Below are positions 32,720 to 57,367 of a DNA stretch of 64,000 nucleotides, piece after piece. Source of the stretch: Paramoeba atlantica (Eukaryota; Protista; Discosea); contig CDRNVI010000149.1 of assembly GCA_977017575.1 (NCBI GenBank), positions 1 to 64,000 of the forward strand, written 5' to 3'. The stretch's first letter is position 1. The number at the start of each line of letters is the position of its first letter. A model generated the notes under the pieces. It saw only the letters and a list, made by a program, of their open reading frames with translations, was not told the DNA's origin and made no database searches. Made by a program: the position numbers and the translations under genes.

Positions 32720-35700
32720 AGCTTACAATTTTATACTGGTGTGCATTGTTTTGAATTATATTTCTGGCAGCCATTTTTGACTTAGCATATGGTTTTTCAA
32801 TAAACACAGTTCTGATCACATCTATTTTTGTTTTTCTCCTTATGTTATAGAAGATTCATGTTATTTTTCTTGTTTCTTGGAGATTATTTTTGTATTTGTC
32901 AATGTCTTTTTTTGCCTGTTATGACACTCTGTTTTAACTTTGTTCTTTGTTTTGTCCAACTGTTCTTTTGATTTTATTTCTGTTTTATAGATTTTCTCTG
33001 CCTTTGATTTGCTTAAGATGATTTCTTGTTGATTTCCATGCTTCATTTTTGTTGGTGAATCAATTCAGTCCTCTTGCTCATTGTTTGTTTTGGTTATTTG
33101 TCTTTGGTTATACTTTTAGAACAACATATTGTTTGGAATTAACATTCTGAACAACTTCAGCTTACACAACACTGTTTCTTTGTATAATCTTAACTTGAGT
33201 TTTGTTTGTTAACATTTCTTAAAGCCTCTTCATGTTCCTCAATCTCTTCTTTGTGTTGGATATTGTGATTGTTGGTTCTATTTGAAAATTTTTGTAATTC
33301 CTTCTGTTATTTCAATTGGTCTTTGTTGATGTTTGCCTCATGCTTACAAATTGCATTTTGATGATTATTTTATTGTTGATTTTGAGTTGAGCCCTAATCA
33401 AACTTTTTCTCTTGATTCAATGAATATTTGTGATCATTTGTATTGATTGAATGATGGTTGTGTAGTTTTAATACTCATTTCTATCTCATTTTGGATTCAT
33501 GGATTTGTATTTTCAGATTTTTGTTCTTCAACTGCCATTTCTGATTGTGAATTTGTGATTGTGGATTTGCTTGACTGGATTTATTCTTATGTTTGACAAT
33601 TTCTCATTTTGTTTTGTTTCCTCAAAGCTTGATTGAATTTTTCCCTCTGTCTTGATGATATTTTTAAAAATTCCTGATATTTTCAAAGTAATTCTAGATT
33701 GAATTTGTACTTTTTGAATCTGAATGTACTTTATTATTAATCTCTTTGGATTTTTCATCTTGTTATCTCAAATTCCCTGCCTGTGAATTTGAACTCTTAT
33801 TTCTAATTGAATTCATCCCTGTGTTGATTTTATTGAAGAAATAATTGATTCCATCTTCTTGTTTTTCTTGTAACAATATCATTTTGAATTTATCATTCTT
33901 GGATTGATGCCTCAGGATGATTCTTCTTGTTCTTTTGTTTTTGATTGATGATGGAAATTCTCCTGATTTCCTTTTTTGCTTTGAAATTGTTGAATTTATA
34001 CCTTCCTTTTACCTTTTGTGATTTTGATTCTAGACTTTATTTTCACTTGGATTCCTCTCTCAGATATTCCTACTTGAATTTTGAAATCCATTTTGGTGTT
34101 AAAAGGATATTCCATTAAAAAATTGTGTTTGTGTCATTTCAGATGTACCACCCCCAAAGCTGTTTTGATTTTGGTTACTGCACTTTCCCTCAAGTTATAA
34201 CCTTTCTAATTTGATTTGTTTGTTTTGAAGTTGATTCAATTGCTGATGCTTCTCTTTTGTCCTCAATACTCTTTATTCTAAATTTCTTTTCTTTTTGAAA
34301 AACCTCAATTTGCTTTTCCTTCTATCATAGTCTCATGTTTTTGTTTATTCTTTGGTAATGATGCTGATTCTTGAATTTGATTTGTAATGGTTTTATTTTC
34401 AGCAAGTTCCATTGAGCATCTTGCACCATTTACACCCTATTCTAATTATTGGTTGATTTATTGGAATTAAGTTTTTTCTTGGTTTTTGATAAGTTGATTT
34501 TGAATTTCCTCTATTGATTCAGTTTTGTGATTTGATGGTTAATACTTTCTCTTGTTTTGAAATGCCTTTATTGTGATGAAATCAAAATATCAAATTGAAA
34601 GGGAGTGTTTGTGTGACTTGTAACTAATTTCTTGGCTTCACCTAAAATATTTTGGTATTATTCGATTTCCTTTGTTATTCCCCATAGTTTATTCTTATCA
34701 AATTATTGTTGTGCAATTTAATCTTTTGATCTGGTTTTCACTTTTCAATTCTCTTTTGTTTTATGGTTGATTGTGAATATTGTTTCTTCTTCCTCTGTTT
34801 CAATGTTATTATCATTTTTAAAGATTGTTATCCCATTTCTTTCTGTTTTGCCTGCAATTTGATAATTGCTTTTGTCTTTACAATCCCTTAAACAATGTCC
34901 TCCAACATTACTTTGCTTTTGAGACATCTGTTACCTTTGAAGGGAGTTCTCATGTCCCCTTTTTGTTCTTTTGTAACTCCATTGCCTCATTTTTGTTCTT
35001 TCAAGGGAGTTCTGAGTTTTATTTTCTCTAACTCTCTGAGTCTTTGTTTTTCTCACCCTTGCAATGGATTTTCACTGGCCTCATAACATTTTTTCTTTGA
35101 TGTTCTTCTTTCAGCTTGTGTTTTTCTCACCTCTCTTCTCAAATCTCAATGCAATTGTAACATTTGTTGGTTTGATCAACATTTATCTTTTGTGTAACAA
35201 CATATTTGTTTTTACATATATGATGTGTGATTTATCTTTGAAAATTCATTCCCTAAATTTTGAAAATGTGTACCTGAAATGCTTTGCCTCTGAACCATGT
35301 TTTCAACACTATTCTGAATGATCTTTTTTGTCTTTTTTGTTATTGTTGTGCTTCATTCCTGTTGCTCTCTGTCCAATGTCTTTCTTGCCCATTCCCAATC
35401 ATTTCTGAAGTTTGTAACACCTTGATAATTTCTGCTGAACTTTTGATTTCTTTGTTTTTGTTGAAAACATTTTGATTTTCTACTCTCAATCTCACTGGTT
35501 CATCTTATGATGACTTGTTTTGCTTTTCTTTGAAAAATTCTTTTTTTCAACATCTTCAACACCTTCCTCTCTCAATGATGAGTAAATGTAGCATACCCAG
35601 AGGAACTATGCAATAGTAATTCCTGTTGAACACTTATCCTTTCTCCTTTCCAATTCTCACTCAATGATGAATGAACATAGCATTTCTGAGGATTCAATGC

Positions 35701-37340
35701 ACCACCTGTGTTTCCAATAGTGAACACAAATTCCTTTCTTCCTATTTCCTGCTGTTTTTGTTGGATTGACTTCTCCTTCCCTGGGTTGTATTATTTTTGA
35801 ATTTTTGAATTGAATTCTCTTGTCTTGTTCTTCATGTCTATGCCTTAAGTTCTCTGATTATCTTTTGTGCTCTCATGTTAATCCCTCTTTTGCTTCAAAG
35901 TAATATGTTTTGGATTATTGATTGCTTCTGCACCAATCCCTTATATTTTTCCATTCTATTCAACTGATATTTGTTTCTGTGATTTTGTGATTTATTTTGA
36001 TTTCCTCAATGGCTTAATATTTGGTTTAATAATGGAGTCTGTTTGTCTCATCTTGATTTGCTATGTTAAATATAAATCTTATTTGTTTTGCTGCTTTGCT
36101 TTAATTGTTCTTGATTTCTAATGTGTTGTGAAATTCTTTCTTTTGATTTATGTAAAACATATTCATTTGGAAGAGTGTATCAGAATCCTGGTGTGAACTA
36201 ATTCTATGTTATGCAAATTAATTTGTTTCTCTTTGTACACTACTGTGCTTCCCTGTTGTGTGAATATCCCTAATAAACATTTGTAAGATTATATAAACTG
36301 TTTTGATTCTGCATGTATTTCTATCTCTCTCATCTGAGCTCTTCCCATCCAGTTCTCACTCTGAATTCAAGTTGTTCCCTTAATATTTTCACACCATTTT
36401 ATTTATCTATTTCATATTATCTTTACATCAATTAATCCTATGTTCTGTAACATTTATCTGTGATTTAATTTCTCTGCCACATTCTTTTTCTTGTATGTTT
36501 TTGTCTTTCATTCTGTTTTGCTTCTTGTCAATTCCACATTTATTATATTTGTTGTTTCATATGAATACTTTTTTTGTTTGTTGGTAAAAGGAATAAACTT
36601 ACTTAATTGGTTTCCTTTGCAATGCATTGCCAATCTTTTCCATAATTTGCTCTTGACTTTTCTCTTTCTTTTTTTTCCCTTTCTTCCCTTTCTTTCTTTC
36701 CTTCACCCACCCACTTTTTCCTTCTCCAAACTCCTGGCCACTTCACACTCAATGCCTTTTCATATTCTTCAATCTCTTTTTTGTGTTGGATATTATGATT
36801 GTTGGTTCTATTTGAAAATTTTCATAATTCCTTCTGTTATTTCAATTGGTCTTTGTTGATGTTCACCTCATGCTTACAAACTGTATTTTGATGATTATTT
36901 TATTATTGATTTTGAGTTGAGTCCTAATCAAGCTTTTTTTCTTGATTTAATGAATGTTTGTGATCATTTGTATTGATTGAATGATGGTTGTATAGTTTTA
37001 ATACTTATTTCTATTTCATTTTGAATTTATAAATTTGTATTTTCAAATTTTTTTATTTCTCAACTGTTACTTTTGATTGTGAATTTGTAATTGTAGATTT
37101 GCCTAACTGGATTTATTTTTATGTTTAATGATTTCTTCTTTTGTTTTGTTTTCTCAAAGCTTGATTAGATTTTTCCCTCTATCTCAATGATGTTTTTAAA
37201 AATTCCTGATATTTTCAAAGTAATTTTGAATTGAATTTATACTTCTTGAATCTGAATGTACTTTGTTGTTAACCTTTTTGGATTTTTCACTTTATTATCT
37301 CAAATTCCTTGCCTGTGAATTTGAATTCTTATTTGTAATT
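32720..37340 (-). mobile_element. Unclassified decayed repeat, copy 2 (longer; contains ~570-bp direct repeats)
   Basis: 33805-36750 is the inverse of 19645-22580; 33240-33808 is repeated at 36770-37340. Confidence 0.65.
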
Positions 37341-37445
37341 TATTTTATTATTTTTTTTTTAAGTAAAAAATTTAAATTTAAAGAAATTGATTTTTAAGAT
37401 TGTTTCTTTTTTTTTTTTTTTTTGATTTTTGATTTTTTGATTTTT

Positions 37446-40400
37446 GATTATTTCCCAATCACTTTTTTCAATGTATAATTCAATATTTGTATTATTTTCA
37501 TTTTTTCTCAATTGTTATTTAGTTTTTGATGTTTAAAAGTTCATTTCCAAACAAGTTACAAATAAAATTGTACTTTTTACACAATTTTACAATCTATTTG
37601 ACTTATTTACAAAAAAAAAAACATATTTCCCTTTATTTTTGATCATTTCCCAACCACTTTTTTCAATGTCTATTTGTATTATTTTCATTTTTAGAAAATT
37701 GTTATTCAGTTTTTGATGTTTAAAAGTTCATTTCCAAACAAGTTACAAATAAAATTGAATATTTTACTCAATTTTACAATTTATTTGATTTATTTACAAA
37801 AAAAAAAACATATTTCCCTTTGTTTTTGATTATTTCCCAATCACTTTTTTCAATGTATAATTCAATATTTGTATTATTTTCATTTTTTCTCAATTGTTAT
37901 TTAGTTTTTGATGTTTAAAAGTTCATTTCCAGACAAGTTACAAATAAAATTGTACTTTTTACACAATTTTACAATCTATTTGACTTATTTACAAAAAAAA
38001 AAACATATTTCCCTTTATTTTTGATCATTTCCCAACCACTTTTTTCAATGTCTATTTGTATTATTTTCATTTTTAGAAAATTGTTATTCAGTTTTTGATG
38101 TTTAAAAGTTCATTTCCAAACAAGTTACAAATAAAATTGAATATTTTACTCAATTTTACAATTTATTTGATTTATTTACAAAAAAAAAAACATATTTCCC
38201 TTTGTTTTTGATTATTTCCCAATCACTTTTTTCAATGTATAATTCAATATTTGTATTATTTTCATTTTTTCTCAATTGTTATTTAGTTTTTGATGTTTAA
38301 AAGTTCATTTCCAGACAAGTTACAAATAAAATTGTACTTTTTACACAATTTTACAATCTATTTGACTTATTTACAAAAAAAAAAACATATTTCCCTTTAT
38401 TTTTGATCATTTCCCAACCACTTTTTTCAATGTCTATTTGTATTATTTTCATTTTTAGAAAATTGTTATTCAGTTTTTGATGTTTAAAAGTTCATTTCCA
38501 AACAAGTTACAAATAAAATTGAATATTTTACTCAATTTTACAATTTATTTGATTTATTTACAAAAAAAAAAACATATTTCCCTTTGTTTTTGATTATTTC
38601 CCAATCACTTTTTTCAATGTATAATTCAATATTTGTATTATTTTCATTTTTTCTCAATTGTTATTTAGTTTTTGATGTTTAAAAGTTCATTTCCAGACAA
38701 GTTACAAATAAAATTGTACTTTTTACACAATTTTACAATCTATTTGACTTATTTACAAAAAAAAAAACATATTTCCCTTTATTTTTGATCATTTCCCAAC
38801 CACTTTTTTCAATGTCTATTTGTATTATTTTCATTTTTAGAAAATTGTTATTCAGTTTTTGATGTTTAAAAGTTCATTTCCAAACAAGTTACAAATAAAA
38901 TTGAATATTTTACTCAATTTTACAATTTATTTGATTTATTTACAAAAAAAAAAACATATTTCCCTTTGTTTTTGATTATTTCCCAATCACTTTTTTCAAT
39001 GTATAATTCAATATTTGTATTATTTTCATTTTTTCTCAATTGTTATTTAGTTTTTGATGTTTAAAAGTTCATTTCCAGACAAGTTACAAATAAAATTGTA
39101 CTTTTTACACAATTTTACAATCTATTTGACTTATTTACAAAAAAAAAAACATATTTCCCTTTATTTTTGATCATTTCCCAACCACTTTTTTCAATGTCTA
39201 TTTGTATTATTTTCATTTTTAGAAAATTGTTATTCAGTTTTTGATGTTTAAAAGTTCATTTCCAAACAAGTTACAAATAAAATTGAATATTTTACTCAAT
39301 TTTACAATTTATTTGATTTATTTACAAAAAAAAAAACATATTTCCCTTTGTTTTTGATTATTTCCCAATCACTTTTTTCAATGTATAATTCAATATTTGT
39401 ATTATTTTCATTTTTTCTCAATTGTTATTTAGTTTTTGATGTTTAAAAGTTCATTTCCAGACAAGTTACAAATAAAATTGTACTTTTTACACAATTTTAC
39501 AATCTATTTGACTTATTTACAAAAAAAAAAACATATTTCCCTTTATTTTTGATCATTTCCCAACCACTTTTTTCAATGTCTATTTGTATTATTTTCATTT
39601 TTAGAAAATTGTTATTCAGTTTTTGATGTTTAAAAGTTCATTTCCAAACAAGTTACAAATAAAATTGAATATTTTACTCAATTTTACAATTTATTTGATT
39701 TATTTACAAAAAAAAAAACATATTTCCCTTTGTTTTTGATTATTTCCCAATCACTTTTTTCAATGTATAATTCAATATTTGTATTATTTTCATTTTTTCT
39801 CAATTGTTATTTAGTTTTTGATGTTTAAAAGTTCATTTCCAGACAAGTTACAAATAAAATTGTACTTTTTACACAATTTTACAATCTATTTGACTTATTT
39901 ACAAAAAAAAAAACATATTTCCCTTTATTTTTGATCATTTCCCAACCACTTTTTTCAATGTCTATTTGTATTATTTTCATTTTTAGAAAATTGTTATTCA
40001 GTTTTTGATGTTTAAAAGTTCATTTCCAAACAAGTTACAAATAAAATTGAATATTTTACTCAATTTTACAATTTATTTGATTTATTTACAAAAAAAAAAA
40101 CATATTTCCCTTTGTTTTTGATTATTTCCCAATCACTTTTTTCAATGTATAATTCAATATTTGTATTATTTTCATTTTTTCTCAATTGTTATTTAGTTTT
40201 TGATGTTTAAAAGTTCATTTCCAGACAAGTTACAAATAAAATTGTACTTTTTACACAATTTTACAATCTATTTGACTTATTTACAAAAAAAAAAACATAT
40301 TTCCCTTTATTTTTGATCATTTCCCAACCACTTTTTTCAATGTCTATTTGTATTATTTTCATTTTTAGAAAATTGTTATTCAGTTTTTGATGTTTAAAAG

Positions 40401-43400
40401 TTCATTTCCAAACAAGTTACAAATAAAATTGAATATTTTACTCAATTTTACAATTTATTTGATTTATTTACAAAAAAAAAAACATATTTCCCTTTGTTTT
40501 TGATTATTTCCCAATCACTTTTTTCAATGTATAATTCAATATTTGTATTATTTTCATTTTTTCTCAATTGTTATTTAGTTTTTGATGTTTAAAAGTTCAT
40601 TTCCAGACAAGTTACAAATAAAATTGTACTTTTTACACAATTTTACAATCTATTTGACTTATTTACAAAAAAAAAAACATATTTCCCTTTATTTTTGATC
40701 ATTTCCCAACCACTTTTTTCAATGTCTATTTGTATTATTTTCATTTTTAGAAAATTGTTATTCAGTTTTTGATGTTTAAAAGTTCATTTCCAAACAAGTT
40801 ACAAATAAAATTGAATATTTTACTCAATTTTACAATTTATTTGATTTATTTACAAAAAAAAAAACATATTTCCCTTTGTTTTTGATTATTTCCCAATCAC
40901 TTTTTTCAATGTATAATTCAATATTTGTATTATTTTCATTTTTTCTCAATTGTTATTTAGTTTTTGATGTTTAAAAGTTCATTTCCAGACAAGTTACAAA
41001 TAAAATTGTACTTTTTACACAATTTTACAATCTATTTGACTTATTTACAAAAAAAAAAACATATTTCCCTTTATTTTTGATCATTTCCCAACCACTTTTT
41101 TCAATGTCTATTTGTATTATTTTCATTTTTAGAAAATTGTTATTCAGTTTTTGATGTTTAAAAGTTCATTTCCAAACAAGTTACAAATAAAATTGAATAT
41201 TTTACTCAATTTTACAATTTATTTGATTTATTTACAAAAAAAAAAACATATTTCCCTTTGTTTTTGATTATTTCCCAATCACTTTTTTCAATGTATAATT
41301 CAATATTTGTATTATTTTCATTTTTTCTCAATTGTTATTTAGTTTTTGATGTTTAAAAGTTCATTTCCAGACAAGTTACAAATAAAATTGTACTTTTTAC
41401 ACAATTTTACAATCTATTTGACTTATTTACAAAAAAAAAAACATATTTCCCTTTATTTTTGATCATTTCCCAACCACTTTTTTCAATGTCTATTTGTATT
41501 ATTTTCATTTTTAGAAAATTGTTATTCAGTTTTTGATGTTTAAAAGTTCATTTCCAAACAAGTTACAAATAAAATTGAATATTTTACTCAATTTTACAAT
41601 TTATTTGATTTATTTACAAAAAAAAAAACATATTTCCCTTTGTTTTTGATTATTTCCCAATCACTTTTTTCAATGTATAATTCAATATTTGTATTATTTT
41701 CATTTTTTCTCAATTGTTATTTAGTTTTTGATGTTTAAAAGTTCATTTCCAGACAAGTTACAAATAAAATTGTACTTTTTACACAATTTTACAATCTATT
41801 TGACTTATTTACAAAAAAAAAAACATATTTCCCTTTATTTTTGATCATTTCCCAACCACTTTTTTCAATGTCTATTTGTATTATTTTCATTTTTAGAAAA
41901 TTGTTATTCAGTTTTTGATGTTTAAAAGTTCATTTCCAAACAAGTTACAAATAAAATTGAATATTTTACTCAATTTTACAATTTATTTGATTTATTTACA
42001 AAAAAAAAAACATATTTCCCTTTGTTTTTGATTATTTCCCAATCACTTTTTTCAATGTATAATTCAATATTTGTATTATTTTCATTTTTTCTCAATTGTT
42101 ATTTAGTTTTTGATGTTTAAAAGTTCATTTCCAGACAAGTTACAAATAAAATTGTACTTTTTACACAATTTTACAATCTATTTGACTTATTTACAAAAAA
42201 AAAAACATATTTCCCTTTATTTTTGATCATTTCCCAACCACTTTTTTCAATGTCTATTTGTATTATTTTCATTTTTAGAAAATTGTTATTCAGTTTTTGA
42301 TGTTTAAAAGTTCATTTCCAAACAAGTTACAAATAAAATTGAATATTTTACTCAATTTTACAATTTATTTGATTTATTTACAAAAAAAAAAACATATTTC
42401 CCTTTGTTTTTGATTATTTCCCAATCACTTTTTTCAATGTATAATTCAATATTTGTATTATTTTCATTTTTTCTCAATTGTTATTTAGTTTTTGATGTTT
42501 AAAAGTTCATTTCCAGACAAGTTACAAATAAAATTGTACTTTTTACACAATTTTACAATCTATTTGACTTATTTACAAAAAAAAAAACATATTTCCCTTT
42601 ATTTTTGATCATTTCCCAACCACTTTTTTCAATGTCTATTTGTATTATTTTCATTTTTAGAAAATTGTTATTCAGTTTTTGATGTTTAAAAGTTCATTTC
42701 CAAACAAGTTACAAATAAAATTGAATATTTTACTCAATTTTACAATTTATTTGATTTATTTACAAAAAAAAAAACATATTTCCCTTTGTTTTTGATTATT
42801 TCCCAATCACTTTTTTCAATGTATAATTCAATATTTGTATTATTTTCATTTTTTCTCAATTGTTATTTAGTTTTTGATGTTTAAAAGTTCATTTCCAGAC
42901 AAGTTACAAATAAAATTGTACTTTTTACACAATTTTACAATCTATTTGACTTATTTACAAAAAAAAAAACATATTTCCCTTTATTTTTGATCATTTCCCA
43001 ACCACTTTTTTCAATGTCTATTTGTATTATTTTCATTTTTAGAAAATTGTTATTCAGTTTTTGATGTTTAAAAGTTCATTTCCAAACAAGTTACAAATAA
43101 AATTGAATATTTTACTCAATTTTACAATTTATTTGATTTATTTACAAAAAAAAAAACATATTTCCCTTTGTTTTTGATTATTTCCCAATCACTTTTTTCA
43201 ATGTATAATTCAATATTTGTATTATTTTCATTTTTTCTCAATTGTTATTTAGTTTTTGATGTTTAAAAGTTCATTTCCAGACAAGTTACAAATAAAATTG
43301 TACTTTTTACACAATTTTACAATCTATTTGACTTATTTACAAAAAAAAAAACATATTTCCCTTTATTTTTGATCATTTCCCAACCACTTTTTTCAATGTC

Positions 43401-45820
43401 TATTTGTATTATTTTCATTTTTAGAAAATTGTTATTCAGTTTTTGATGTTTAAAAGTTCATTTCCAAACAAGTTACAAATAAAATTGAATATTTTACTCA
43501 ATTTTACAATTTATTTGATTTATTTACAAAAAAAAAAACATATTTCCCTTTGTTTTTGATTATTTCCCAATCACTTTTTTCAATGTATAATTCAATATTT
43601 GTATTATTTTCATTTTTTCTCAATTGTTATTTAGTTTTTGATGTTTAAAAGTTCATTTCCAGACAAGTTACAAATAAAATTGTACTTTTTACACAATTTT
43701 ACAATCTATTTGACTTATTTACAAAAAAAAAAACATATTTCCCTTTATTTTTGATCATTTCCCAACCACTTTTTTCAATGTCTATTTGTATTATTTTCAT
43801 TTTTAGAAAATTGTTATTCAGTTTTTGATGTTTAAAAGTTCATTTCCAAACAAGTTACAAATAAAATTGAATATTTTACTCAATTTTACAATTTATTTGA
43901 TTTATTTACAAAAAAAAAAACATATTTCCCTTTGTTTTTGATTATTTCCCAATCACTTTTTTCAATGTATAATTCAATATTTGTATTATTTTCATTTTTT
44001 CTCAATTGTTATTTAGTTTTTGATGTTTAAAAGTTCATTTCCAGACAAGTTACAAATAAAATTGTACTTTTTACACAATTTTACAATCTATTTGACTTAT
44101 TTACAAAAAAAAAAACATATTTCCCTTTATTTTTGATCATTTCCCAACCACTTTTTTCAATGTCTATTTGTATTATTTTCATTTTTAGAAAATTGTTATT
44201 CAGTTTTTGATGTTTAAAAGTTCATTTCCAAACAAGTTACAAATAAAATTGAATATTTTACTCAATTTTACAATTTATTTGATTTATTTACAAAAAAAAA
44301 AACATATTTCCCTTTGTTTTTGATTATTTCCCAATCACTTTTTTCAATGTATAATTCAATATTTGTATTATTTTCATTTTTTCTCAATTGTTATTTAGTT
44401 TTTGATGTTTAAAAGTTCATTTCCAGACAAGTTACAAATAAAATTGTACTTTTTACACAATTTTACAATCTATTTGACTTATTTACAAAAAAAAAAACAT
44501 ATTTCCCTTTATTTTTGATCATTTCCCAACCACTTTTTTCAATGTCTATTTGTATTATTTTCATTTTTAGAAAATTGTTATTCAGTTTTTGATGTTTAAA
44601 AGTTCATTTCCAAACAAGTTACAAATAAAATTGAATATTTTACTCAATTTTACAATTTATTTGATTTATTTACAAAAAAAAAAACATATTTCCCTTTGTT
44701 TTTGATTATTTCCCAATCACTTTTTTCAATGTATAATTCAATATTTGTATTATTTTCATTTTTTCTCAATTGTTATTTAGTTTTTGATGTTTAAAAGTTC
44801 ATTTCCAGACAAGTTACAAATAAAATTGTACTTTTTACACAATTTTACAATCTATTTGACTTATTTACAAAAAAAAAAACATATTTCCCTTTATTTTTGA
44901 TCATTTCCCAACCACTTTTTTCAATGTCTATTTGTATTATTTTCATTTTTAGAAAATTGTTATTCAGTTTTTGATGTTTAAAAGTTCATTTCCAAACAAG
45001 TTACAAATAAAATTGAATATTTTACTCAATTTTACAATTTATTTGATTTATTTACAAAAAAAAAAACATATTTCCCTTTGTTTTTGATTATTTCCCAATC
45101 ACTTTTTTCAATGTATAATTCAATATTTGTATTATTTTCATTTTTTCTCAATTGTTATTTAGTTTTTGATGTTTAAAAGTTCATTTCCAGACAAGTTACA
45201 AATAAAATTGTACTTTTTACACAATTTTACAATCTATTTGACTTATTTACAAAAAAAAAAACATATTTCCCTTTATTTTTGATCATTTCCCAACCACTTT
45301 TTTCAATGTCTATTTGTATTATTTTCATTTTTAGAAAATTGTTATTCAGTTTTTGATGTTTAAAAGTTCATTTCCAAACAAGTTACAAATAAAATTGAAT
45401 ATTTTACTCAATTTTACAATTTATTTGATTTATTTACAAAAAAAAAAACATATTTCCCTTTGTTTTTGATTATTTCCCAATCACTTTTTTCAATGTATAA
45501 TTCAATATTTGTATTATTTTCATTTTTTCTCAATTGTTATTTAGTTTTTGATGTTTAAAAGTTCATTTCCAGACAAGTTACAAATAAAATTGTACTTTTT
45601 ACACAATTTTACAATCTATTTGACTTATTTACAAAAAAAAAAACATATTTCCCTTTATTTTTGATCATTTCCCAACCACTTTTTTCAATGTCTATTTGTA
45701 TTATTTTCATTTTTAGAAAATTGTTATTCAGTTTTTGATGTTTAAAAGTTCATTTCCAAACAAGTTACAAATAAAATTGAATATTTTACTCAATTTTACA
45801 ATTTATTTGATTTATTTATA
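37446..45820. repeat. Satellite array: 22 x 382 bp, each unit a 195+187 bp dimer
   Basis: Marker gattatttcccaatc recurs at 37446, 37828, 38210, 38592 ... 45468 (period 382); paralogous marker gatcatttcccaacc lies 195 bp into each unit; very AT-rich; no CpG seen. Confidence 0.97.
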
Positions 45821-45985
45821 AAAAAAAACTAAAAAACTGAAAAACTGAAAATTTGAAAAACTGAAAAATTGAAAAATTGAAAAATTGAAAAATTGAAAAA
45901 TTAAACAATTGGAAAATTGGAAAATTGGAAAATTGGAAAATTGGAAAATTGGAAAATTGGAAAATTGGAAAATTGGAAAATTAAA
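45820..45985. repeat. 8-bp minisatellite grading from aaaaactg to aaaaattg to gaaaattg
   Basis: Read directly from the sequence. Confidence 0.9.
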
Positions 45986-46271
45986 AGAATTGAACTTGAG
46001 ACTTCAAAAATGAGAAATTGAAGAAAAGAACAACTAAACTATCATACTCATCTTTAAAAAAACAAAAAAATAAGAAAGTTAATGAGATTAATTTAAATTT
46101 TTTTTTATTTTTTCTTTTTTAACATCATTTCTTTTGTATTAATCTTTTATATTTCTTCTTCAAAATAAAATCTAAAATTAATATCTTTTTCACTACTTTT
46201 CAAATTAAAAACTTCTCAAAATATTATTTTATCATATAAAAGAGTTTTTTATTCAAACTTTAAATCTTAAT

Positions 46272-46488
46272 TAAGTTTAAAAAAATATTCAAATATGAAA
46301 TATTATAAATATATATAACATCTTTATTTAAATTCTTGTTGAATTCAATTCAATTGATTAAAGTTTATTATCATTAATATCCTTATTACTACATTTTCTT
46401 TTCTTCACTTTTTCACTTTTTGATTTCCCCAGTTTTCAATTATACTTCTTTAAACTATTGAAACCTTAGAAGTAAAACAAAATCTACC
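46272..46488 (+). repeat. 5' LTR (heavily mutated; left edge uncertain)
   Basis: Aligns to 51504-51711; followed by PBS-like tggtgatgcttcaatttgaa. Confidence 0.85.
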
Positions 46489-46489
46489 T

Positions 46490-46509
46490 TGGTGATGCTT
46501 CAATTTGAA
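46490..46509 (+). promoter_or_regulatory. Putative primer-binding site
   Basis: Starts with TGG immediately after the 5' LTR; cognate tRNA not identified. Confidence 0.55.
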
Positions 46510-49500
46510 TAACCAATAGAAGAAGCATTTGATCTTGAGAAATTGCTTAGAGGAAACTCCAAGCAGAACAATTGGTGAAGGCAATTCATTTCCTGGTTGT
46601 GCAAAATGAAGAGTTGGTGTGAATAAAGAAGGAGTTTTTAAAGATGAAAGAACCAAACTACAAATCTTAGAAACAACATTGGAAATTGATAATTAAAGAT
46701 GTGAATTTCCAAAACCCAGTCCAAGTCTCTCAATTTTGCATCTAAAAAAAGAGTATTGAACAAGATATTTGACCAAACATACTTGAGTTCAGAAAACAAA
46801 TCAAGTTTGCAAGGGCAATTGAAACTCATTAGGCCAAAAGTTGGATGGATTACCTTTGAATTTGTTGTATACCCTTAATAGATTCTTTGGTGAGAAAGTT
46901 GTCCTTATGGAACAGCAGAAGTTTGATCTTTTTTGAGTACCTGATAAAAAAGTTACTAATCAAGAATTTCAGGTGGTAACTATAGAATATCTGCACCTGT
47001 TCTTGAAGATAAGAGAAACTCCCTTTCAGGAAACCTATGTGAAGGAAGCAATGTAAGAATTCAAAAATCCAATCTTCCAAGGTCTAAATAAAGTGTTTGT
47101 TAGGGGGGGAACAGATGAGTATTAAAGAACCAAAGAAAAATTGAAGAGGAGTGAACCAATAACCTGTTTTCTTTCATCCCTGGATGAGCACTGTGGATAA
47201 ATATGGTGATGCTGCAGCAAGGAAATATAAACATATGAGTCTTGTTAATTGGAACAAAAGAGTTCCAGGAAAGAGAGGATGTGGGGATTTCAGTTGGAAA
47301 ATACTTTACTTGTGAACTCCTTGGATGTGGGATATTAACTCTTGAAGAACTTAAAGAAAAAGCAAATGGTTTGTCAATTCTTTTAAGAGTAAAAAGGAAT
47401 TTACTCAAAATACTTGGCAACAAGACAAGATGGTGGTTAAGATGAGTGAAAATGGCTTCACAATCCATATTAGCAACCTAGTAAGAGACTTGAATCCTAA
47501 AATATACCAAATAAATGATAAACTGTTCAACATACCTTGCATGGTCAATGATATTTACTACACAAGCACTTTGTGATTCTAGGGCTTGCAGGATAGATGT
47601 TGTGGCAAGAACATTCCTGAATAAAGCAATTCCCAAACTTTGGAGACCATTACAAAGGAAATCAAAGGAAATTACATTTCCTTAGCTGACAAATCATCAA
47701 TAATGCCAACTGACTCCTTCCCAATCCTAGAGAGATTGGAGAATTAAAAATAACTACACAAACAAGATTGGATCCTAGATCAATCTTAGCAATTGAGGTC
47801 AGACAGAAAAAAAAAGTTCTACAACTGAGATTTGATCATGTGAGACAATATATCTACACTACCTGAATTGAGATTATGAATGTTGGAAATACCTCATTCT
47901 CACTTGAAAAAGGGTCTACATGTTGTAAAACACATTAATGTTACAGAAAAGGATGCAGAACAAACCATTGCAAAACCTCTTGATAAAAGACCAGTAAAAC
48001 TTCACCAAAGGAAGTCAGATGAAAGAATGTAGAAAGATAAATTGGTCACTCCAGAACTACAGCCTCAAGAGGACTGCCATGGAATGGCAAAACACATGTG
48101 CAATCAAGGAGGTTGGGGATTCTCAGAAGAAACAGCATCAATGTTCTTTAGCAAATATCCTATTGAGAGATGGTCAGAAAAATCTGGAAGAAGATGAAAA
48201 GATGATTCCAGAGGAATATGAGGAGTTCACAAAGAAAACTGACCTCACTCTTAGTGATCTCAATCTTGATCAAATGATTCAACTCTGTAAACTCTTTGAA
48301 AAATACAAAGAAATGTGGGACATACTTAGCAATGCTCCAATCATGCATACAGATGCAACAGAGTTCAAAATTGAACTTAAAAATGAAACTCAAGAGCCTT
48401 TTAGATGAGCTTATTATACAAAGGAGACAGTTAAAAGGACAATTGAAGAGAATCAAATCCAAGAGATGGCCAAGAGAAGAGTCATCCAATCATCAAATTC
48501 ACCATGTGAGTGGCAAAAAAGCAAATGAAAAAGTCTGATTCTATGTGGATTACAGAGAATTAAATGAAAGAACTAAGAAATGGAGTTATCCAATACCAAA
48601 AAAATTAATGATATGTTGTCATACCTGGGTGAATCCTCATTCTTTTCAACATTGGATATGACTGCAGCATTTTAGTCAATCCCAATCCAAGAGGAGGACA
48701 AGGGAAAAATGGCTTTTGTTCACAATTCAGACTGTGGGAATGGAATTCAATGCCATTTGGATTAACAAATGCTCTGGCAACACAGCAACATTTTATAGAT
48801 ACAATACTTGCTGGCTTGCAATAATATATATCTGTATTAATTATATTGATGACATAGTTATCTTCTCAAAAACCTTTGAGAAACATATTCAATCATTAGT
48901 AGAGAAAGTGCTGGATAGATTAAAGGAAAATAAGTTGCAAATTAACCTGAGTAAAGTGGTGAAAGATCTTTCACATTACTTGGATATACAGCAACAAAGG
49001 ATGGAATTTTGGCTAATGACAAGAAAGTCAAGGCCATAAAACATTTTCCACAACCAACCAATCAAAAGGAATTACAATCACTCTTAGGATTGGTTAGTTG
49101 GTGTAGGAGATTCATCCACAATTGTTCTCAAAAAACATACCACCTTCGAGAATTACTGCTACAACCATTATTTGAATGGGTTAAGGAGGCAGATAATGAA
49201 TTTCAGGAAATGAAGGAAACAATTGCAAGAATACCAATGCCAAATTTCAGAAAAACATTCTATATTCATGTGGACACATCAAAAAATGGTTATGATTCAA
49301 TACTGACACAACACCCTGATGATCCTCTTGATAAACCAGCACCAAAAAGGTCAGGAATACCAAAAAAGCACAAAATAGTCGCTTTCACAAGTCTGGCTTT
49401 GCCAAAACACAATAAAAATATACAAATTCTGAACAAGAATGTTATGAGGCTTACTGGGCAATTAACAAGTTTAAGGAATTCATTATGGGAAGAGATGTGG

Positions 49501-51490
49501 TGATTTTTAGTGAGCACCAGAGTCAACAGTCAAACTGTGCAACTCCACAGTAAGCAAACAAGAAGCAAACTTATCTGTGGGTGGCTGCTGGAAATAGCAG
49601 CAGTTGCAAGTCAAATTCTACACCAACCTGGGAAAACACTGGTTATTCTTGATACACTCAGTTGAGCACATCATGTATTCTATCAAGAGGAAGATGCTCA
49701 AACTCCAATTAAGAAGTCCTGGAGAGACTGGGAGTTAAAAATGTGGAAAACAAAACAACATTTTAACAAACAAAAAATGGCAATATTGAAGCTCTGTTCT
49801 CTCTCAAAAACCTGTCATAGGGTAGATGAGTCCACCAGAGATGGAAAGGAGTTATTGGCTAAAATGGGTCAGTGCACAGAAAGCATGGGTCAGCTTGGTG
49901 GCCAATCTGCTCAAGGAAGGAGCAGGGGACTCTCTCAAGGATGACTATCTGGGATAGCTGTTGGGTCAGCTTCATGTAAGACACTGGGCAGTGTGATGGG
50001 TTAGCTTCAGACAATTCCCAGCAAGACTGAGTGTAATGACATTTCTGACTCTGGAAGTGAGGATGAATTTAGGTCAAGTACACAACCAGGTGAACCTACC
50101 AGAGTTCATACAGTGCCTGAAATACAACCTCTTATAAATAAGGAGCCAGAAGGAGCAAAACTGTCAGATACTGGTGCTGGCCACACTGGATCTGAGAATC
50201 AGAATGATTCAGAAAAACAATGGATCATAAAGGACCAAGAACAATACTGGAGCAATATGAAGGATCAATTTTGTCAAAGAATGAGAAATTTGATCTTAAT
50301 TAGAGAATACCTGAGTTTTGTAAAGACATTCAGAAATTATTGGAAACAAGATGACATTATTGTCTCAATAATACATATACCCATATCTTATCAATTGTGG
50401 ATGCCTTCACAGGGTACTTTTCATTATTTCTGCTGAAAGCTGTCATCACAAAAGAGATGGCACAATGCCTCTTGAAATATGTTACAATCCATTCAATGCC
50501 ACCGGAAATAGTGACTGATGGAGGGGCCCAGAAAGAACTCTTTGTGGAATTGACACAAATCTGGGGAACACACCATGCAAAGGTCTCCCTCTATAACCAC
50601 AAAGGAAATGGCAAAGTGGGAACAATTCATTCACCTGTTAAAAACATGATGAGGGCTTTATGTCCAGAAATATCAAAGGGACTGTGGGATTTGCTCCTTC
50701 CAATTGGTGGAATTTGCTTACAATACCCAAGTTCATTCTGTAACAAAACAAAAACCTTTCATGTTACAATTTGGTCGAATACCAACATATCCAATCAATG
50801 TTACACTGGGAACATCAAACCCAAAATTGGTTACTTCAGATGAATATGTGGCTAATGTGAGGGATAAGATGTTAGAAATCTTTCAACTGGTAAATGAAAA
50901 ATGAAGAGATTCCAAAGAACAAAGAGTTGATGACTATAATGCTCATCAAAGAACTCAAATTCTATCAGTTGGAGACTGAGTCCTTCTTCTAAATCATGAA
51001 AAAAGGAAGAAATTTAACCAAAAATTCAATCCAAGGACACAAGGTGATGTCCATATGATAACTGAGGTTGTTTCAGCTCAAATATATCGATTAAGGAATC
51101 TCAAAACAAGATGGATTCTTCCACAACCTGTTCATGGAAGTGAATTAATATGAAAGGGTTGAGATTGAAAAGGAACAAAACCTGATAAAGGAGAAAGAAC
51201 TCCCACCAGAAGATGGATGAAGAAGTCTGAGCTATAGAATTATCTCAGAAAGAGAATTTGATGGTTATCAACAATATTGTATGGAAATCCAACCACCTAC
51301 TGGAAGAAAATGACATGAGTGGTGGGAGAAAGAACACCTGGGAGGTACAAAAGAGTTGAAAGATTACCTCAAGGCAAAGAAGCCTCAAAAAGGTTATTGG
51401 TGGGCAGACTGATCAATAATGGGTGGATTTTCCCTGTAAGAACTTTGAATTTTGTTCAGAACTGACAAAGCTGCATTCAAAACTCTGCTT

Positions 51491-51503
51491 GCAAGGGGGG
51501 GGG
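51491..51503 (+). promoter_or_regulatory. Polypurine tract
   Basis: gcaaggggggggg directly before the TG of the 3' LTR. Confidence 0.85.
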
Positions 51504-51711
51504 TGTAAATAATTAAATATCCAAATATGGAATATTATAAATATGTATAACACCTTTATTTGAATCCTTGTTGAATTCAGTTCAACTGATTGCAGTTCAT
51601 TGTTGTCAACATCCTGTCACTGTGTTCTCTCCTCTCTACTCTCTCACTTGTTGATTTCCCAGTTTCTCAACTGTGCTTCTTTGAAACCTCAGAAATAAAA
51701 CAAAATCTACA
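51504..51711 (+). repeat. 3' LTR (208 bp, TGTA...TACA)
   Basis: TG...CA termini, preceded by the PPT, aligns to the 5' LTR. Confidence 0.92.
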
Positions 51712-54700
51712 AAGGATTGCTCCATCCAAGAAAGCTTCACAACAAAAAAAAAACAAGATGTCACATAAAAACAAAAAGGAAAAAGGAAATGGAAATGGAT
51801 ATAAAAATAAAAAATAATATCGACAAGAGAGTGAGCCAGGCTGAGAAAAAAATAATCATAACAACAATAAATAACAACAATAATAAAATAACAAAATAAC
51901 AACAACAATATTCCAAACAAAGTACACTATTGGGGAGAATCAAACAAAACAACAACAGCAACATTCACAACAGACTCTTTGCCAACAAATACTTTCAGGG
52001 TGAAATCATTCCAAACAGTTTTAAATAATATATGTGACACAACCAAAAAACCTAGAATAAAGAAAGAAACAACAATCCATAAAAATAACCCAAACAGTAA
52101 TTCTCTCTCAAAGATAAGTTGAGGATCCAAACTTTTAAACAACTCTCCCAACAACATCTCAACCAACCAACAAAAGAAAACCAAATAATAATAAAAGCAA
52201 ACATAACAAAAAAAACCTTTTTTGAAGAAAAAAAAGAATAGGTCACACAAGTTCCAACAAACACAAGCAAGAAAAAACAGTCCAAAAAACTCACATCAGT
52301 AATTATTCAATCCCTCACTCTTGTTCCCTTTTGGAGGGGGATATCTTTTTTTTTGAATTTCATTCAAGAAAACAAAAAAAACCTAACTCTCAGATTCTCC
52401 ATCAACCCTCTGGCTCTCTGGTAACAAAAAAGAGAAGTAACCCACCAAAGAAAAGAAGAAATAAGAAAAAGAAAGCACAAAAAAACAGGAAAAGGAAAAA
52501 GAAAAAAAGAAAAAAAGAAAGAAAACAAAAAAAGAAAGAAAAAAAAGAAAGAAAGAAAAAAAAGAAAGAAAAAGAAAGAAAAAAAAGAAAGAAAAAGAAA
52601 CCACAACTTGAAGCAACATATTTAACCCAATCATGATCACAGTGACCTATGAAAGAAGAGAAAAAAAGAGAAAAGGAAAAAGAGAAAGGAAAAGAAACAA
52701 AAAGAGAGAAAAAAAAGGGAAGAAAAAAAAGGGAGAAAAGAAGGGAGAAAAAAAGAGAAGTAAGGAAAAAAGAAAAGAGATGATGGCAAGAACAAAAACA
52801 GAAAACTAGAGTGGGGAAGGTGCAACACTCTTTTTTTAGCCACAAAAAAAAGATTTTGGGGTTTCACAATTTTTTTTACCCTTTGTTTTTTTTGTTTTTT
52901 TTGTTTCCTTTCAATCCTTTTTGCATCTCCCAAGTCTTGGTCATGTTTCACAAAGACACTATCACACTCATCATCAAGACAAAAAAAAACACTCAAACAG
53001 AAGGGATTGAAGAAAATTGGAACAAAAAGATGAAGAAAAATGAAAAAATTCAATATGTGGGAATTGAACCTGTCAGGTGAATAGATGGTTCTTGCCCTTC
53101 TCCTTACTCTCTTAGGTTCGAAAAAGAAGTCTTTCAATCCTCCTCCAAAGAAGAGAAGACAAAAATAGAAGACATTATTTGAAAAATAACAAACCAAAGT
53201 CACCAGGGTTACCAAAATGAACCTAGGATTTTCATACTCTCTGGGTGCTAATTTGAAAATTCATACCCAAAGAGTATAAGTTTTCTTCCTTGAGGTCATT
53301 TGAGCGTTGCTTGGATCACCACTGATAGGGAAAGAACCAAAATAACACTTCTTCATCCATTCAAGAACGAAAGTTCTTTTTATGGTTATCCAATAAGTTG
53401 ATTGTTTCAACAAAAAAAAAGATCAAAAGAGATGAGTTCTCTGGTCAAAAAAAATGAGAAAAAGGAGGCAAAAAGAAAAGATCAGAAGAGTAAGATAAAG
53501 GAAATAGGGGAAATAAAATGGAAACAAACAAAAAAAATCTAATGATAAAGAAAAAAGAAAAAAGAACCCTAGTAAGCTGATAGTCTCACAGCTTAACCAT
53601 CTCAGTCAGGTCCCATTTCTCTCGAAGCTCTTCTTTCTCAGAAGACAAAGGAATGCCAAATCAAAGGTTCCCAACATTGAACTGGGGTGAGTCATAAAAT
53701 AATTGAAGAAATAATTGAAATTCTCAAGGGTCCACCAGGTTTAATCCTCTTATAACATCAAAGAGAAAAGGGTTGTTTGAACAAATCAAAAGAACTTTTT
53801 AACTTGTTTATAACACTCTTTACAATCTTTTCAATTTGTTTTGCCTTTCTTGATCTTGAATGTTAATCACAAATAAATTATTAAAAGCCAAGTACAAAGT
53901 GGAGACATTATACAAAGAGGAAAGCAATTATCCCTTTTAAAAGAAAAGAAAAGAAAAAAAGTTAGTTTTTTTGATTAAAAAAAACAAAAAACAAAAAAAA
54001 ACATCATCATCACAACAAGACACCAAAACCCCTCCCTCCACCACAGGTATTCAACAAAACCAAATAACCATAACCCAAATATCCACCCAAGAAACAACCA
54101 CCTATAAACAACTGCCAACAAATAACAAATAACAAACAACAAAACAACAAACAACAATTCCCCCCCCACAAACAATGCACAATACTCCAGGAACAACAAA
54201 ACACAAAATAAAGAAGCTCCCTTCATTCAAAAGGAAAGTCAATGAATTTTAAAAAAAACAAAGGGGAAAGAAAGGAGGGAAGGAAGGAAGAGGAAAAAGA
54301 GAAAGGAGGAAAAGAGGGGGGAAAACAAAAGAGATAAAAAAGAAAAAGGGAAAGTAAAAAAGGGAGAAAAAGGAGAAAGATAAGAAAGAAAGAAACAAGA
54401 GGAAGAGAAGGAAAAACCTCTGATTGAAAGCAGATCAAGCAAGGGAAAAAAGAACCTTGGATGTGTGGTCTCAAGTCTCTCAGCAAGAATTGTATCATAA
54501 GAAGAAAAAGAGTTGTTTGAACAAATCAAAAAAACTTTTAATTTGTTCATAAAACTCAAAAATTGTTACCTAACTAACAGAAAAAGAAAAAAAAAAAAGA
54601 AAATGAAAAGAAAGAAAAAGAAAAGAGAAAAAAAAAGAAAAAAGAAAGAGGAAAAGGAGAAAAAAGAAAGAAAAAGAAAAAGAGAAAAAGAAAAGAGGGA

Positions 54701-54879
54701 GAAAAAAAAGGAGAAAAAAAAGGAGAAAAAAAAAGAAAAAAGAAAAAAGAAAAGAAAAAGAAAAAGAAAAAAAAGAAAAAGAGAAAGAGAAAAAGAAAAG
54801 AAGAAAAAGAAAAAAAGAAAAAGAACCAACAAAAAGATAGAGACTTTTGTGGTGTGTGCAGGGGAGGGGGGGAGGTTGT

Positions 54880-55700: not shown

Positions 55701-55968
55701 TCAATGCAATTGGATTATTATTATTTAGCTTTGCCCCAACACACCAATAGACACTTCACTGAACTGAGCCAACTTTTTCCAAAAAACACAGGTTTCTTCG
55801 TCCCCCTCCTTGACTTGACCCAACACACACACACACACAAAAACTCAAAACAAAAACTCAAAACACAAAAAAAACAAAAACCAATCAAAAACAATCAAAA
55901 ACAACCAAACCAAAACAAAACAAAGTAATCCCTTCTTGTGTGATTGATCGATAAATACAACTACTACT

Positions 55969-56483: not shown

Positions 56484-56977
56484 AAGTGTGCAAAAAGTTG
56501 CTGTTTTTTTAGTTTTTCTTTGTTGTTTGCCTCACATTTCATTGGTATTTTTGTTGGTATTTTATCATTCTCTCTGGGTACTAATTTGAAAATTTGTACC
56601 CAGAGAATATGAATTTTACTCAAACTAAGAAACCAAATTAGACCATTGATGTCTCCTTCAAAAAGAAAAAAGAGAATGTTTTTTTGGTACTGGGATTGGG
56701 ATGCTTTCAACTGGGTATGACATACTTTCCTTTCCTTTTTTCTTTTTTAAGAAGTGAAAAAAATGAGAAGAAATCAACAAAGAAGAAAACCACAAAATCA
56801 AAACCAATTGAGACTCTTTAAGGCAAACCTCCAGAATTCCAGCAAAAAGGGAAAACCAAAAGAAATCGTGGTTCCACTTGCATTTTTGTTTTTTGGGGAG
56901 GGAGAGTGTTTTTTTCGGGGTCTGTTGTAAAAATGACAAAGCATTAACCCAATAATGGCAATACATAAATAAATTGA

Positions 56978-57366: not shown

Positions 57367-57367
57367 G

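What the first reader, a model, noticed from the sequence alone, without database searches (positions are those of the whole stretch)
33240..51711. Mutation load rises toward the satellite on both sides
Seen, in two independent internal controls. Right side: the 5' LTR, ~450 bp from the array, carries most of the C>T/G>A differences against the 3' LTR 5 kb away (cagttcaactgattgcagttcattgttgtcaac becomes caattcaattgattaaagtttattatcattaat). Left side: the direct-repeat copy abutting the array (36770-37340) has roughly twice as many derived T/A changes as its partner at 33240, by eye. LTRs are identical at insertion, and the direct repeats presumably were at duplication, so the asymmetry looks positional. 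Inference: a methylation or mutagenic activity spreads from the array.
Basis: partly seen in the sequence, partly recalled or inferred. Interest (0 to 1): 0.75.

Follow-up and report, generated by a model that had tools for sequence, protein, structure and literature searches.

The report
C-to-T decay peaks beside satellite
Dead jumping genes next to an AT-rich satellite in this protist lose cytosines to thymines about five times faster at the satellite's edge than a few kilobases away, a real and still-running positional effect, but it is the local peak of a repeat-zone-wide decay, not proof of a signal sent out by the satellite.

Summary
The array-side LTR differs from its partner mainly by T/A for C/G (28 sites against 4). 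The array-side copy of the left repeat does the same (47 against 19).

The array plus about 14 kb of outer flank is a duplicated arm present nine times at 97.5-98.5% identity. That gave seven independent lineages of recent, polarised mutations:
- 166 of 192 singleton changes are C:G>T:A.
- Non-CpG C>T per G/C site falls from 0.12 at the array edge to about 0.03.
- The fitted length constant is about 1 kb (p about 1e-7).

An outgroup element shows the same gradient inside the retroelement, independent of time depth.

- The core (left) side is uniformly high, with no significant slope.
- The left repeats are not LTRs and need not have started identical.
- The decay is slow, hits both strands and is ten times faster at CpG, with no CpA preference, so it is not fungal RIP.
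- The genome shows no C5 DNA methyltransferase, though it has JBP1/JBP2-like genes.

The scan had already reported this decay beside other satellites of this genome (s1-405773, s1-377458).

The parts
37436..45828 (.). Satellite array: 22 dimers of 382 bp (187+195 bp monomers), GC 19.6%, no CpG
   Evidence: TRF. GC and CpG. At least 17 arrays of the same satellite elsewhere in the genome.
45824..45994 (.). (AAAAATTG)n microsatellite capping the outer end of the array
45995..46271 (+). Junction between array and retroelement, GC 16.6%; zone of the highest recent C>T rate
46272..46488 (+). 5' LTR of the degraded Ty3/gypsy element (array-side copy), GC 19.4%, followed by a primer-binding site (TTGGTGATGC)
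   Evidence: Alignments; sequence. 28:4 asymmetry; 17:2 when polarised.
46489..51503 (+). Interior of the Ty3/gypsy element (RT, then RNase H; frames broken), with a C>T excess in its array-side half
   Evidence: Pfam. Against the outgroup, window T/A to outgroup T/A is 185:109 in 46278-49000 and 163:165 in 49000-51711.
51504..51711 (+). 3' LTR (far copy), GC 31.7%, preceded by a polypurine tract (G9)
36748..37371 (+). Array-side copy (A') of the left direct repeat: start of a second, truncated tandem unit of a 3.5-kb repeat family, not an LTR
   Evidence: Recent C>T 25/152.
33218..33842 (+). Far copy (A) of the left direct repeat, first segment of the full 3.5-kb family unit (33218-36747)
   Evidence: Recent C>T 6/181.
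45995..59233 (+). Outer arm: segmentally duplicated block present nine times in the genome (97.5-98.5% identity), used as seven independent lineages
55000..59233 (.). Outer edge of the CpG-free domain: CpGs still present and being lost (26 of 89 CpG cytosines hit recently)

Best explanation
Shown:
- The repeat-rich core, the satellite and about 10 kb beyond it lie in a domain where cytosines are slowly and continuously converted to thymines on both strands.
- Conversion is ten times faster at CpG. It happens at equal rates at CpA, CpC and CpT, with almost no other kind of mutation.
- Within this domain the rate peaks at the borders of the satellite, about 5-6 times the outer baseline. On the outer side it falls with a length constant of about 1 kb.
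- Two otherwise comparable copies, the two LTRs and the two left repeats, therefore decay at different speeds according to their distance from the array.

Inferred mechanism:
- Unrepaired or poorly repaired cytosine deamination occurs in silent, compact repeat chromatin that is nucleated at or densest around the array and thins out over a few nucleosomes.
- A CpG-specific cytosine mark of unknown origin adds to it.
- This is a chronic property of the chromatin, not an episodic, homology-triggered attack.
For: Spectrum:
- Outer side: 166 of 192 polarised singletons are C:G>T:A, 15 are T:A>C:G and 11 are transversions.
- Core side: 156 of 193 are C:G>T:A, with one transversion.

Context: CpG 36/129, CpA 0.027, CpC 0.043, CpT 0.027.

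Gradient:
- Bins, logistic regression and exponential fit all agree.
- Five of seven lineages show it individually.

Tests independent of time depth:
- LTR pair polarised 17:2 for C>T, against 10:8 for other changes.
- Interior asymmetry against the outgroup is 185:109 near the array and 163:165 far from it (heterogeneity p=9e-4).
- A control LTR pair of the related element on C193 is symmetric, 7:4.

Both sides of the array: in the single pair C149-C177, transitions per G/C site rise to 0.143 and 0.128 at the two array edges. The core sits at 0.05-0.086 and the outer arm at 0.005-0.015.

Slow and chronic:
- Events are spread over all lineages, with no strand coordination (p=0.08).
- There is no strand bias near the array on either side.

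Not sequencing error: mirror arms differ at 5 sites in 14.5 kb, with no indels.

Domain: CpG o/e is about 0 from 1 to 54 kb and 0.5-0.9 beyond 56 kb.
Against: - No canonical C5 methyltransferase gene was found, so the tenfold CpG effect has no known writer.
- Only three housekeeping-type deaminase-fold genes are present, and UDG is present.
- The core side has no significant slope.
- Non-C>T changes are also enriched near the array on the outer side (5/1001 against 21/11882, p=0.047).
- Arms with long arrays (at least 0.85 kb) show the proximal excess and the two with the shortest arrays (0.26 and 0.65 kb) do not, but only at p=0.053. One long-array arm (C184) shows none.
- Chromatin state was not measured. 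It is inferred.
Confidence: 0.55

Rival explanations
1. Self-reinforcing AT context, with no chromatin signal or enzyme. Cytosines deaminate faster where the duplex opens more easily, so DNA beside a 19% GC block decays, becomes AT-rich itself and passes the effect outward. This is the isochore-type model of GC-dependent deamination, cited from my own knowledge of Fryxell and Zuckerkandl 2000.
For: - Local GC alone predicts the C>T rate (GC in 100 bp p=1e-3; GC in 500 bp p=1.5e-4).
- It keeps a marginal independent effect when distance is included (p=0.044).
- The flanks touching the array are more AT-rich (10.9% and 16.6% GC) than the array itself.
- No dedicated enzyme was found.
Against: - Distance is the better predictor and survives the GC covariate (p=8e-6).
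- Beyond 2 kb, local GC has no significant effect, and the three lower GC quartiles have equal rates.
- It does not explain the tenfold CpG effect.
- It does not explain why the core side at 30-33% GC mutates several times faster than the outer arm at similar GC.
Confidence: 0.15
2. Spreading cytosine methylation. An unrecognised or unassembled methyltransferase methylates the array and its surroundings, and 5mC deamination causes the decay.
For: - CpG is ten times faster than other contexts.
- CpG is completely erased over the core, the array and 8-10 kb of flank, with a sharp recovery beyond 56 kb.
- The kilobase-scale decline is typical of methylation spreading from repeats in plants and animals (my own knowledge).
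Against: - There is no PF00145 or TIGR00675 match at E up to 1. The same search finds UDG, Tet_JBP and deaminase genes as uninterrupted frames in this assembly.
- The positional gradient is carried entirely by non-CpG cytosines, because no CpG is left within 2 kb of the array.
Confidence: 0.15
3. No rate difference at all. The near copies are simply older or of different origin: a chimeric retroelement, an older tandem copy on the left, and deeper coalescence or less gene conversion near arrays among the arms.
For: - No target-site duplication is recognisable (TTAAT at 46267-46271 against AAGGA at 51712-51716).
- The left repeats are not LTRs. The far copy is closer to other family members (6-10% divergence) than to its partner (12%).
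- Non-C>T changes are also enriched near the array.
- The pairwise profile steps down at about 49 kb.
Against: - A primer-binding site follows the 5' LTR and a polypurine tract precedes the 3' LTR, as in the outgroup element.
- The old LTR asymmetry is specific to C>T: 17:2 against 10:8 for other changes.
- The same gradient shape appears in post-duplication singletons in five of seven lineages.
- It also appears in the near and far LTRs since duplication (6/40 against 1/61).
- It appears in the left pair since duplication (25/152 against 6/181). Age of origin cannot affect these.
Confidence: 0.07
4. Episodic enzymatic hypermutation of repeats with leakage into flanks (RIP-like), or deamination of single-stranded DNA exposed by break repair and resection at the unstable array.
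For: - The spectrum is almost pure C:G>T:A.
- The reach of 1-3 kb matches RIP leakage and resection tracts. RIP leakage is described for Leptosphaeria in PMC3105345; the Neurospora figures are from my own knowledge.
- Array lengths differ greatly between arms (0.26-8.5 kb), so the arrays do break and recombine.
Against: - There is no CpA or other non-CpG dinucleotide preference.
- There is no strand-coordinated run structure (p=0.08).
- The strand bias does not flip across the array (odds ratios 0.94 and 0.93).
- No RID or DIM-2-type gene was found.
- Array units stay 99% identical.
- Changes accumulate gradually in every lineage.
Confidence: 0.08

Closest known systems
RIP and RIP leakage in ascomycete fungi (Neurospora; Leptosphaeria AT-isochores, PMC3105345)
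   Same: C:G>T:A changes confined to repeated DNA drive it towards AT-rich blocks and spill 1-4 kb into neighbouring sequence. Position relative to the repeat therefore decides mutation load.
   Different: - There is no dinucleotide preference other than CpG.
- The process is slow and continuous, not burst-like.
- There are no strand-coordinated tracts.
- No RID or DIM-2-type methyltransferase gene was found.
- The organism is a JBP-encoding protist, not a fungus.
- The satellite units themselves stay 99% identical.
5-methylcytosine deamination with methylation spreading from repeats (plants, vertebrates)
   Same: CpG is hypermutable about tenfold, CpG is erased over a repeat domain, and the effect declines over kilobases at the domain edge.
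   Different: No C5 methyltransferase is detectable. Most of the decay, and all of the gradient, is at non-CpG cytosines in every context.
GC-content-dependent cytosine deamination (isochore models)
   Same: The decay is one-way towards AT. It is faster in AT-rich surroundings and is self-reinforcing.
   Different: Here distance to the array predicts the rate better than local GC does. Domains of equal GC differ several-fold.
Kinetoplastid regional centromeres (AT-rich tandem arrays flanked by degenerate retroelements; own knowledge of Trypanosoma brucei)
   Same: An AT-rich array of roughly nucleosome-sized units lies among dead retroelements, in a genome with JBP1/JBP2-like genes.
   Different: Centromere function is untested here. 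No positional C>T gradient has been described for those centromeres, to my knowledge.

Membership tests
Fungal RIP / RIP leakage | Mutations almost only C:G>T:A in repeated DNA and its flanks | tested here: met
   166/192 and 156/193 recent changes are C:G>T:A.
Fungal RIP / RIP leakage | Characteristic dinucleotide preference (CpA in Neurospora; other fixed contexts elsewhere) | tested here: not met
   CpA 0.027, CpT 0.027, CpC 0.043; only CpG stands out, at 0.28. The LTR pair shows the same.
Fungal RIP / RIP leakage | RID or DIM-2-type C5 methyltransferase-like gene | tested here: not met
   No PF00145 or TIGR00675 match in the assembly. An incomplete assembly cannot be excluded.
Fungal RIP / RIP leakage | Burst-like, strand-coordinated mutation of both copies of a duplication | tested here: not met
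   Same-strand neighbours are 86 of 159, against 77 expected (p=0.08). Changes are spread over all lineages, and satellite units remain 99% identical.
5mC deamination with spreading methylation | CpG hypermutability and CpG depletion limited to a domain | tested here: met
   CpG is ten times faster. CpG o/e is about 0 over 1-54 kb and 0.5-0.9 beyond 56 kb.
5mC deamination with spreading methylation | A DNA cytosine-5 methyltransferase in the genome | tested here: not met
5mC deamination with spreading methylation | 5mC present on the DNA, declining with distance | not testable with these tools
   No read-level or bisulfite data are available.
GC-dependent spontaneous deamination | C>T rate per site rises as local GC falls, independent of position | tested here: inconclusive
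   The GC effect is p=0.044 with distance in the model and not significant beyond 2 kb.
Ty3/gypsy LTR retrotransposon (right element) | RT followed by RNase H, two LTRs, a primer-binding site after the 5' LTR and a polypurine tract before the 3' LTR | tested here: met
   Pfam RVT_1 then RT_RNaseH_2. LTR alignment with the outgroup, primer-binding site and polypurine tract.
Ty3/gypsy LTR retrotransposon (right element) | Target-site duplication showing that both LTRs come from one insertion | tested here: not met
   TTAAT against AAGGA. The 5' flank is heavily decayed, so this does not prove a chimera.
LTR pair (left direct repeats) | The family's other full copies carry the repeat at both ends | tested here: not met
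   Family copies on C163, C207, C203 and C140 have a single copy of the segment and end at the 568-bp unit.

The most novel reading that the evidence does not exclude
A protist with JBP1/JBP2-like genes and no detectable C5 methyltransferase runs a repeat-domain C-to-T erosion that is nucleated at satellite arrays and reaches about 1 kb outward. This would be a functional analogue of RIP or methylation-driven decay built on different chemistry. One possibility is uracil repair held back where thymine is being hydroxylated to make base J. Another is an unknown CpG-marking enzyme.
Probability: 0.15. Interest if true: 0.8.

Novelty: new variant of a known kind. Interest (0 to 1): 0.55.

Why it matters
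The locus gives a clean, replicated natural experiment. Nine copies of one 14-kb arm each sit beside their own satellite array, so mutation rate can be read as a function of distance with sequence held constant.

It shows three things:
- Position beside a satellite changes the C>T rate five- to six-fold over about 1 kb.
- LTR-divergence dating of retroelements near such arrays is unreliable in this genome. The two LTRs here would give ages differing about seven-fold.
- A strong CpG-first cytosine decay exists where no known cytosine methyltransferase can be found.

If the cause is chromatin-linked repair failure or a new DNA mark, these arms are the place to measure it.

Tried and rejected
- **Chance.** Rejected by binomial, Fisher, logistic and likelihood-ratio tests.
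- **Sequencing or assembly error.** Rejected. Mirror arms differ at 5 sites over 14.5 kb and at 5 sites over 10.7 kb, all transitions, with no indels in the C184 pair.
- **Classical RIP.** Rejected on context, strand coordination and the missing enzyme gene.
- **Resection or single-strand exposure from breaks in the array.** It predicts opposite strand bias on the two sides, and none was seen. Power is limited, at 41 and 51 events.
- **Left repeats as LTRs.** Rejected.
- **Decay of the array's own edge units.** Differences between edge and core units are not C>T-biased (10:9, with many transversions), so this was uninformative.
- **Dose-response with array length.** Suggestive only (p=0.053).
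- **Polarising the left pair site by site with family copies.** I used identities from whole-genome searches as a relative-rate test instead.
- **Naming the organism.** An ESM Atlas look-up of the LINE protein gave no taxon, and two literature searches and one paper did not settle it. I call it kinetoplastid-type only, on the two uninterrupted Tet_JBP frames of 893 and 1044 aa.
- **ORFs in 52-62 kb.** They had no informative Pfam match.
- **Unused and avoided steps.** The large protein searches were not used. Per-column majority states were used only on the fly to polarise changes, and were neither stored nor printed.
Full report
**What is there**

The window is contig C149:1-64000 of a 45.7-Mb, 248-contig eukaryotic assembly.
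- A satellite of 22 dimers of 382 bp (187+195 bp monomers, 99% alike, GC 19.6%, no CpG) spans 37436-45828. An (AAAAATTG)n tract caps it, to 45994.
- To its right lies a degraded Ty3/gypsy element, with RVT_1 then RT_RNaseH_2 and broken frames.
- Its LTRs are at 46272-46488 and 51504-51711. A primer-binding site follows the first and a G9 polypurine tract precedes the second, exactly as in a related element on contig C193.
- To the left lies a 3.5-kb repeat unit (33218-36747). It is followed by the first 624 bp of a second unit (36748-37371) that runs up to the array.
- The region from 1 to about 54 kb is a mosaic of dead retroelements with CpG o/e near zero. CpG recovers to 0.5-0.9 beyond 56 kb.

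Right pair:
- The near LTR has T/A where the far one has C/G at 28 sites. The reverse holds at 4 (p=1.9e-5).
- Polarised by the C193 element, the near LTR has 17 derived C>T/G>A and the far LTR 2 (p=7e-4). Other changes are balanced at 10:8.
- GC is 19.4% in the near LTR, 31.7% in the far LTR and 34-36% in the outgroup LTRs.
- The outgroup's own LTR pair, a control, differs at 11 sites, split 7:4.

Left pair:
- The split is 47:19 (p=7.6e-4).
- Against eight other family copies the far repeat is 90-94% identical and the near repeat 86-89%. That makes the near branch about 2.2 times longer.

**The locus is one of nine copies, which allows a stronger test**

- The whole retroelement with both LTRs recurs eight times at 98% identity.
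- After I fetched the flanks, homology runs from inside the array to window 59233-60156 in all nine.
- The copies fall into three clades with 0.5-2.4% divergence.
- Two pairs are mirror images on one contig. They differ at only five sites each, all transitions, with no indel in the C184 pair. This also bounds assembly error at about 3.5e-4.
- Each arm abuts its own array of 0.26 to 8.5 kb.

I took seven independent lineages and polarised each biallelic column by which clades carry which state. That gave 285 events, of which 192 are singletons on terminal branches.

**Recent mutation spectrum and context**

- Of the 192 singletons, 166 are C:G>T:A, 15 are T:A>C:G and 11 are transversions.
- On the core side three copies (C149, C224, C177) give 193 events: 156 C:G>T:A, 36 T:A>C:G and one transversion.
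- CpG cytosines are hit at 0.28 per site, CpA at 0.027, CpT at 0.027 and CpC at 0.043.
- Successive events on a branch do not share a strand more often than chance (86 of 159 against 77; p=0.08).
- C>T per C and G>A per G are equal near the array on both sides (odds ratios 0.94 and 0.93).

The process is therefore slow, two-stranded and CpG-first, and otherwise blind to context. It is not fungal RIP.

**The gradient on the outer side**

- Non-CpG C>T per G/C site by distance from the array: 0.120 (0-0.5 kb), 0.073 (0.5-1 kb), 0.052 (1-2 kb), 0.029, 0.026, 0.033, and 0.018 at 9-13 kb.
- First kilobase against the rest: odds ratio 2.7, p=1.2e-4.
- Logistic slope on log distance: z=-5.5, p=5e-8. 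It is still p=8e-6 with GC in the surrounding 100 bp as a covariate. That covariate keeps a weak effect of its own (p=0.044) and none beyond 2 kb.
- Exponential fit: baseline 0.024, amplitude 0.114, length constant about 1.0 kb with a profile interval of roughly 0.55-2.6 kb. Likelihood ratio against a flat rate: p=1.6e-7.
- Five of seven lineages show the excess on their own.
- Arms with arrays of at least 0.85 kb show it and the two with the shortest arrays do not, but only at p=0.053.
- Since duplication the near LTR gained 6 C>T on 40 G/C sites and the far LTR 1 on 61 (p=0.015).

Survivorship would bias against this result. The cytosines left near the array should be the cold ones.

**A test that does not depend on time depth**

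I aligned the element to its C193 relative and counted transitions in each direction.
- In 46278-49000 the window copy has the T/A state 185 times and the outgroup 109 times (p=1.1e-5).
- In 49000-51711 the counts are 163 and 165.
- Heterogeneity between the two halves is p=9e-4.

Both halves have the same divergence time, so this is a difference in rate along the element. It fades about 3 kb from the array.

**The core side is different**

- In the single pair C149-C177, transitions per G/C site run 0.086, 0.085, 0.054, 0.079, 0.050, 0.072, 0.108 and 0.143 up to the array.
- On the other side they run 0.128, 0.053, 0.040, 0.044, 0.015, 0.014, 0.011, 0.011 and 0.005.
- Both edges are local maxima. 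The core stays high throughout.
- Its slope is not significant (p=0.13; p=0.55 for well-polarised events).
- The homologous pair still differs five-fold in post-duplication C>T: 25/152 near against 6/181 far (p=4e-5).
- The ratio of transitions to transversions is 147:1 on the core side and 85:6 on the outer side (p=0.013). This argues that the core's excess is a C>T rate effect and not greater age.

The left repeats are not LTRs. Full family copies on C163, C207, C203 and C140 carry one such segment and end at a 568-bp unit that also occurs as 20 or more solo copies. The far repeat is closer to those copies than to its partner, so the premise that the two began identical is unproven.

**Enzymes**

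- The assembly gives no match to PF00145 or TIGR00675, even at E up to 1.
- The same search finds UDG.
- It finds three deaminase-fold genes of housekeeping size.
- It finds two Tet_JBP genes with uninterrupted frames of 893 and 1044 aa, each on two contigs. These are the sizes of kinetoplastid JBP1 and JBP2 (my own knowledge).

I therefore call the genome kinetoplastid-type. I could not name the species. This is unresolved.

**Caveats**

- On the outer side the non-C>T changes are also about 2.8-fold enriched in the first kilobase (5/1001 against 21/11882, p=0.047). Some of the recent gradient may reflect deeper coalescence or a general rise in rate.
- The LTR and interior tests do not share this weakness, and there the asymmetry is specific to C>T.
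- No target-site duplication can be recognised (TTAAT against AAGGA). A chimeric element is therefore not formally excluded. That does not touch the post-duplication evidence.
- I could not fetch more genome sequence. Other arrays and the left-pair outgroups were not examined base by base.

**Relation to earlier work of this scan**

- Notes s1-405773 and s1-377458 report the same C-to-T gradient beside other satellites of this genome.
- s1-405743 reports the missing methyltransferase.
- s1-377532 reports the mirror-image arrays.

My results agree with all four. The methyltransferase search and the mirror pairs I repeated myself.

**Verdict**

There is a real, replicated positional gradient of a slow cytosine decay, peaking at the satellite borders. 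It is best read as a property of the repeat chromatin domain. It does not prove an activity that radiates from the array, and it is not RIP.

Noticed in passing
G000 contigs C184 (42258-47688 minus / 119434-124864 plus) and C167 (85961-91376 minus / 150803-156218 plus); loci L005/L006, L008/L009: The mirror-image arm pairs on each contig, 60-70 kb apart, differ at only 5 sites over 14.5 kb (C184) and 5 sites over 10.7 kb (C167), all transitions. They are giant near-perfect inverted repeats around a core, kept alike by conversion or very young.
   Followed up: partly
whole genome: There is no C5 DNA methyltransferase match. There are two Tet_JBP genes with uninterrupted 893-aa and 1044-aa frames (JBP1/JBP2-like), each on two contigs. 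Gene hits come in contig pairs (C3/C30, C39/C40, C8/C52), so the assembly may hold two haplotypes.
   Followed up: partly
window 37372-37435 and 45995-46277: The unique DNA touching the array is more AT-rich (GC 10.9% and 16.6%) than the array itself (19.6%). Something holds the array's composition up while its flanks run down.
   Followed up: no
window 36180-36747: This 568-bp unit ends the 3.5-kb repeat family and also occurs as 20 or more dispersed solo copies at about 91% identity. It may be a solo LTR or a SINE-like element.
   Followed up: no
window 23732-27709 (minus strand): A LINE with an intact 875-aa endonuclease-RT frame and a separate RNase H frame still keeps some CpG (o/e 0.15-0.27) inside the otherwise CpG-free core. 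It is a young insertion and a possible clock for the CpG decay.
   Followed up: no
window 33218-33842: The far left repeat is 99% identical in four other arms (C234, C224, C219, C177), while the block around it is about 97.6% identical. This points to local gene conversion or an unusually low mutation rate.
   Followed up: no
G000:C177:42468-44710 (locus L031, 6470-8601): In the C177 arm about 2.2 kb of other sequence separates the left repeat from a much shorter array (0.85 kb). The arms differ by insertions and by array length.
   Followed up: no
window 62374-63493 and 60771-61065: Long T-rich or pyrimidine-rich low-complexity tracts (over 1 kb) lie just beyond the end of the duplicated arm.
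   Followed up: no
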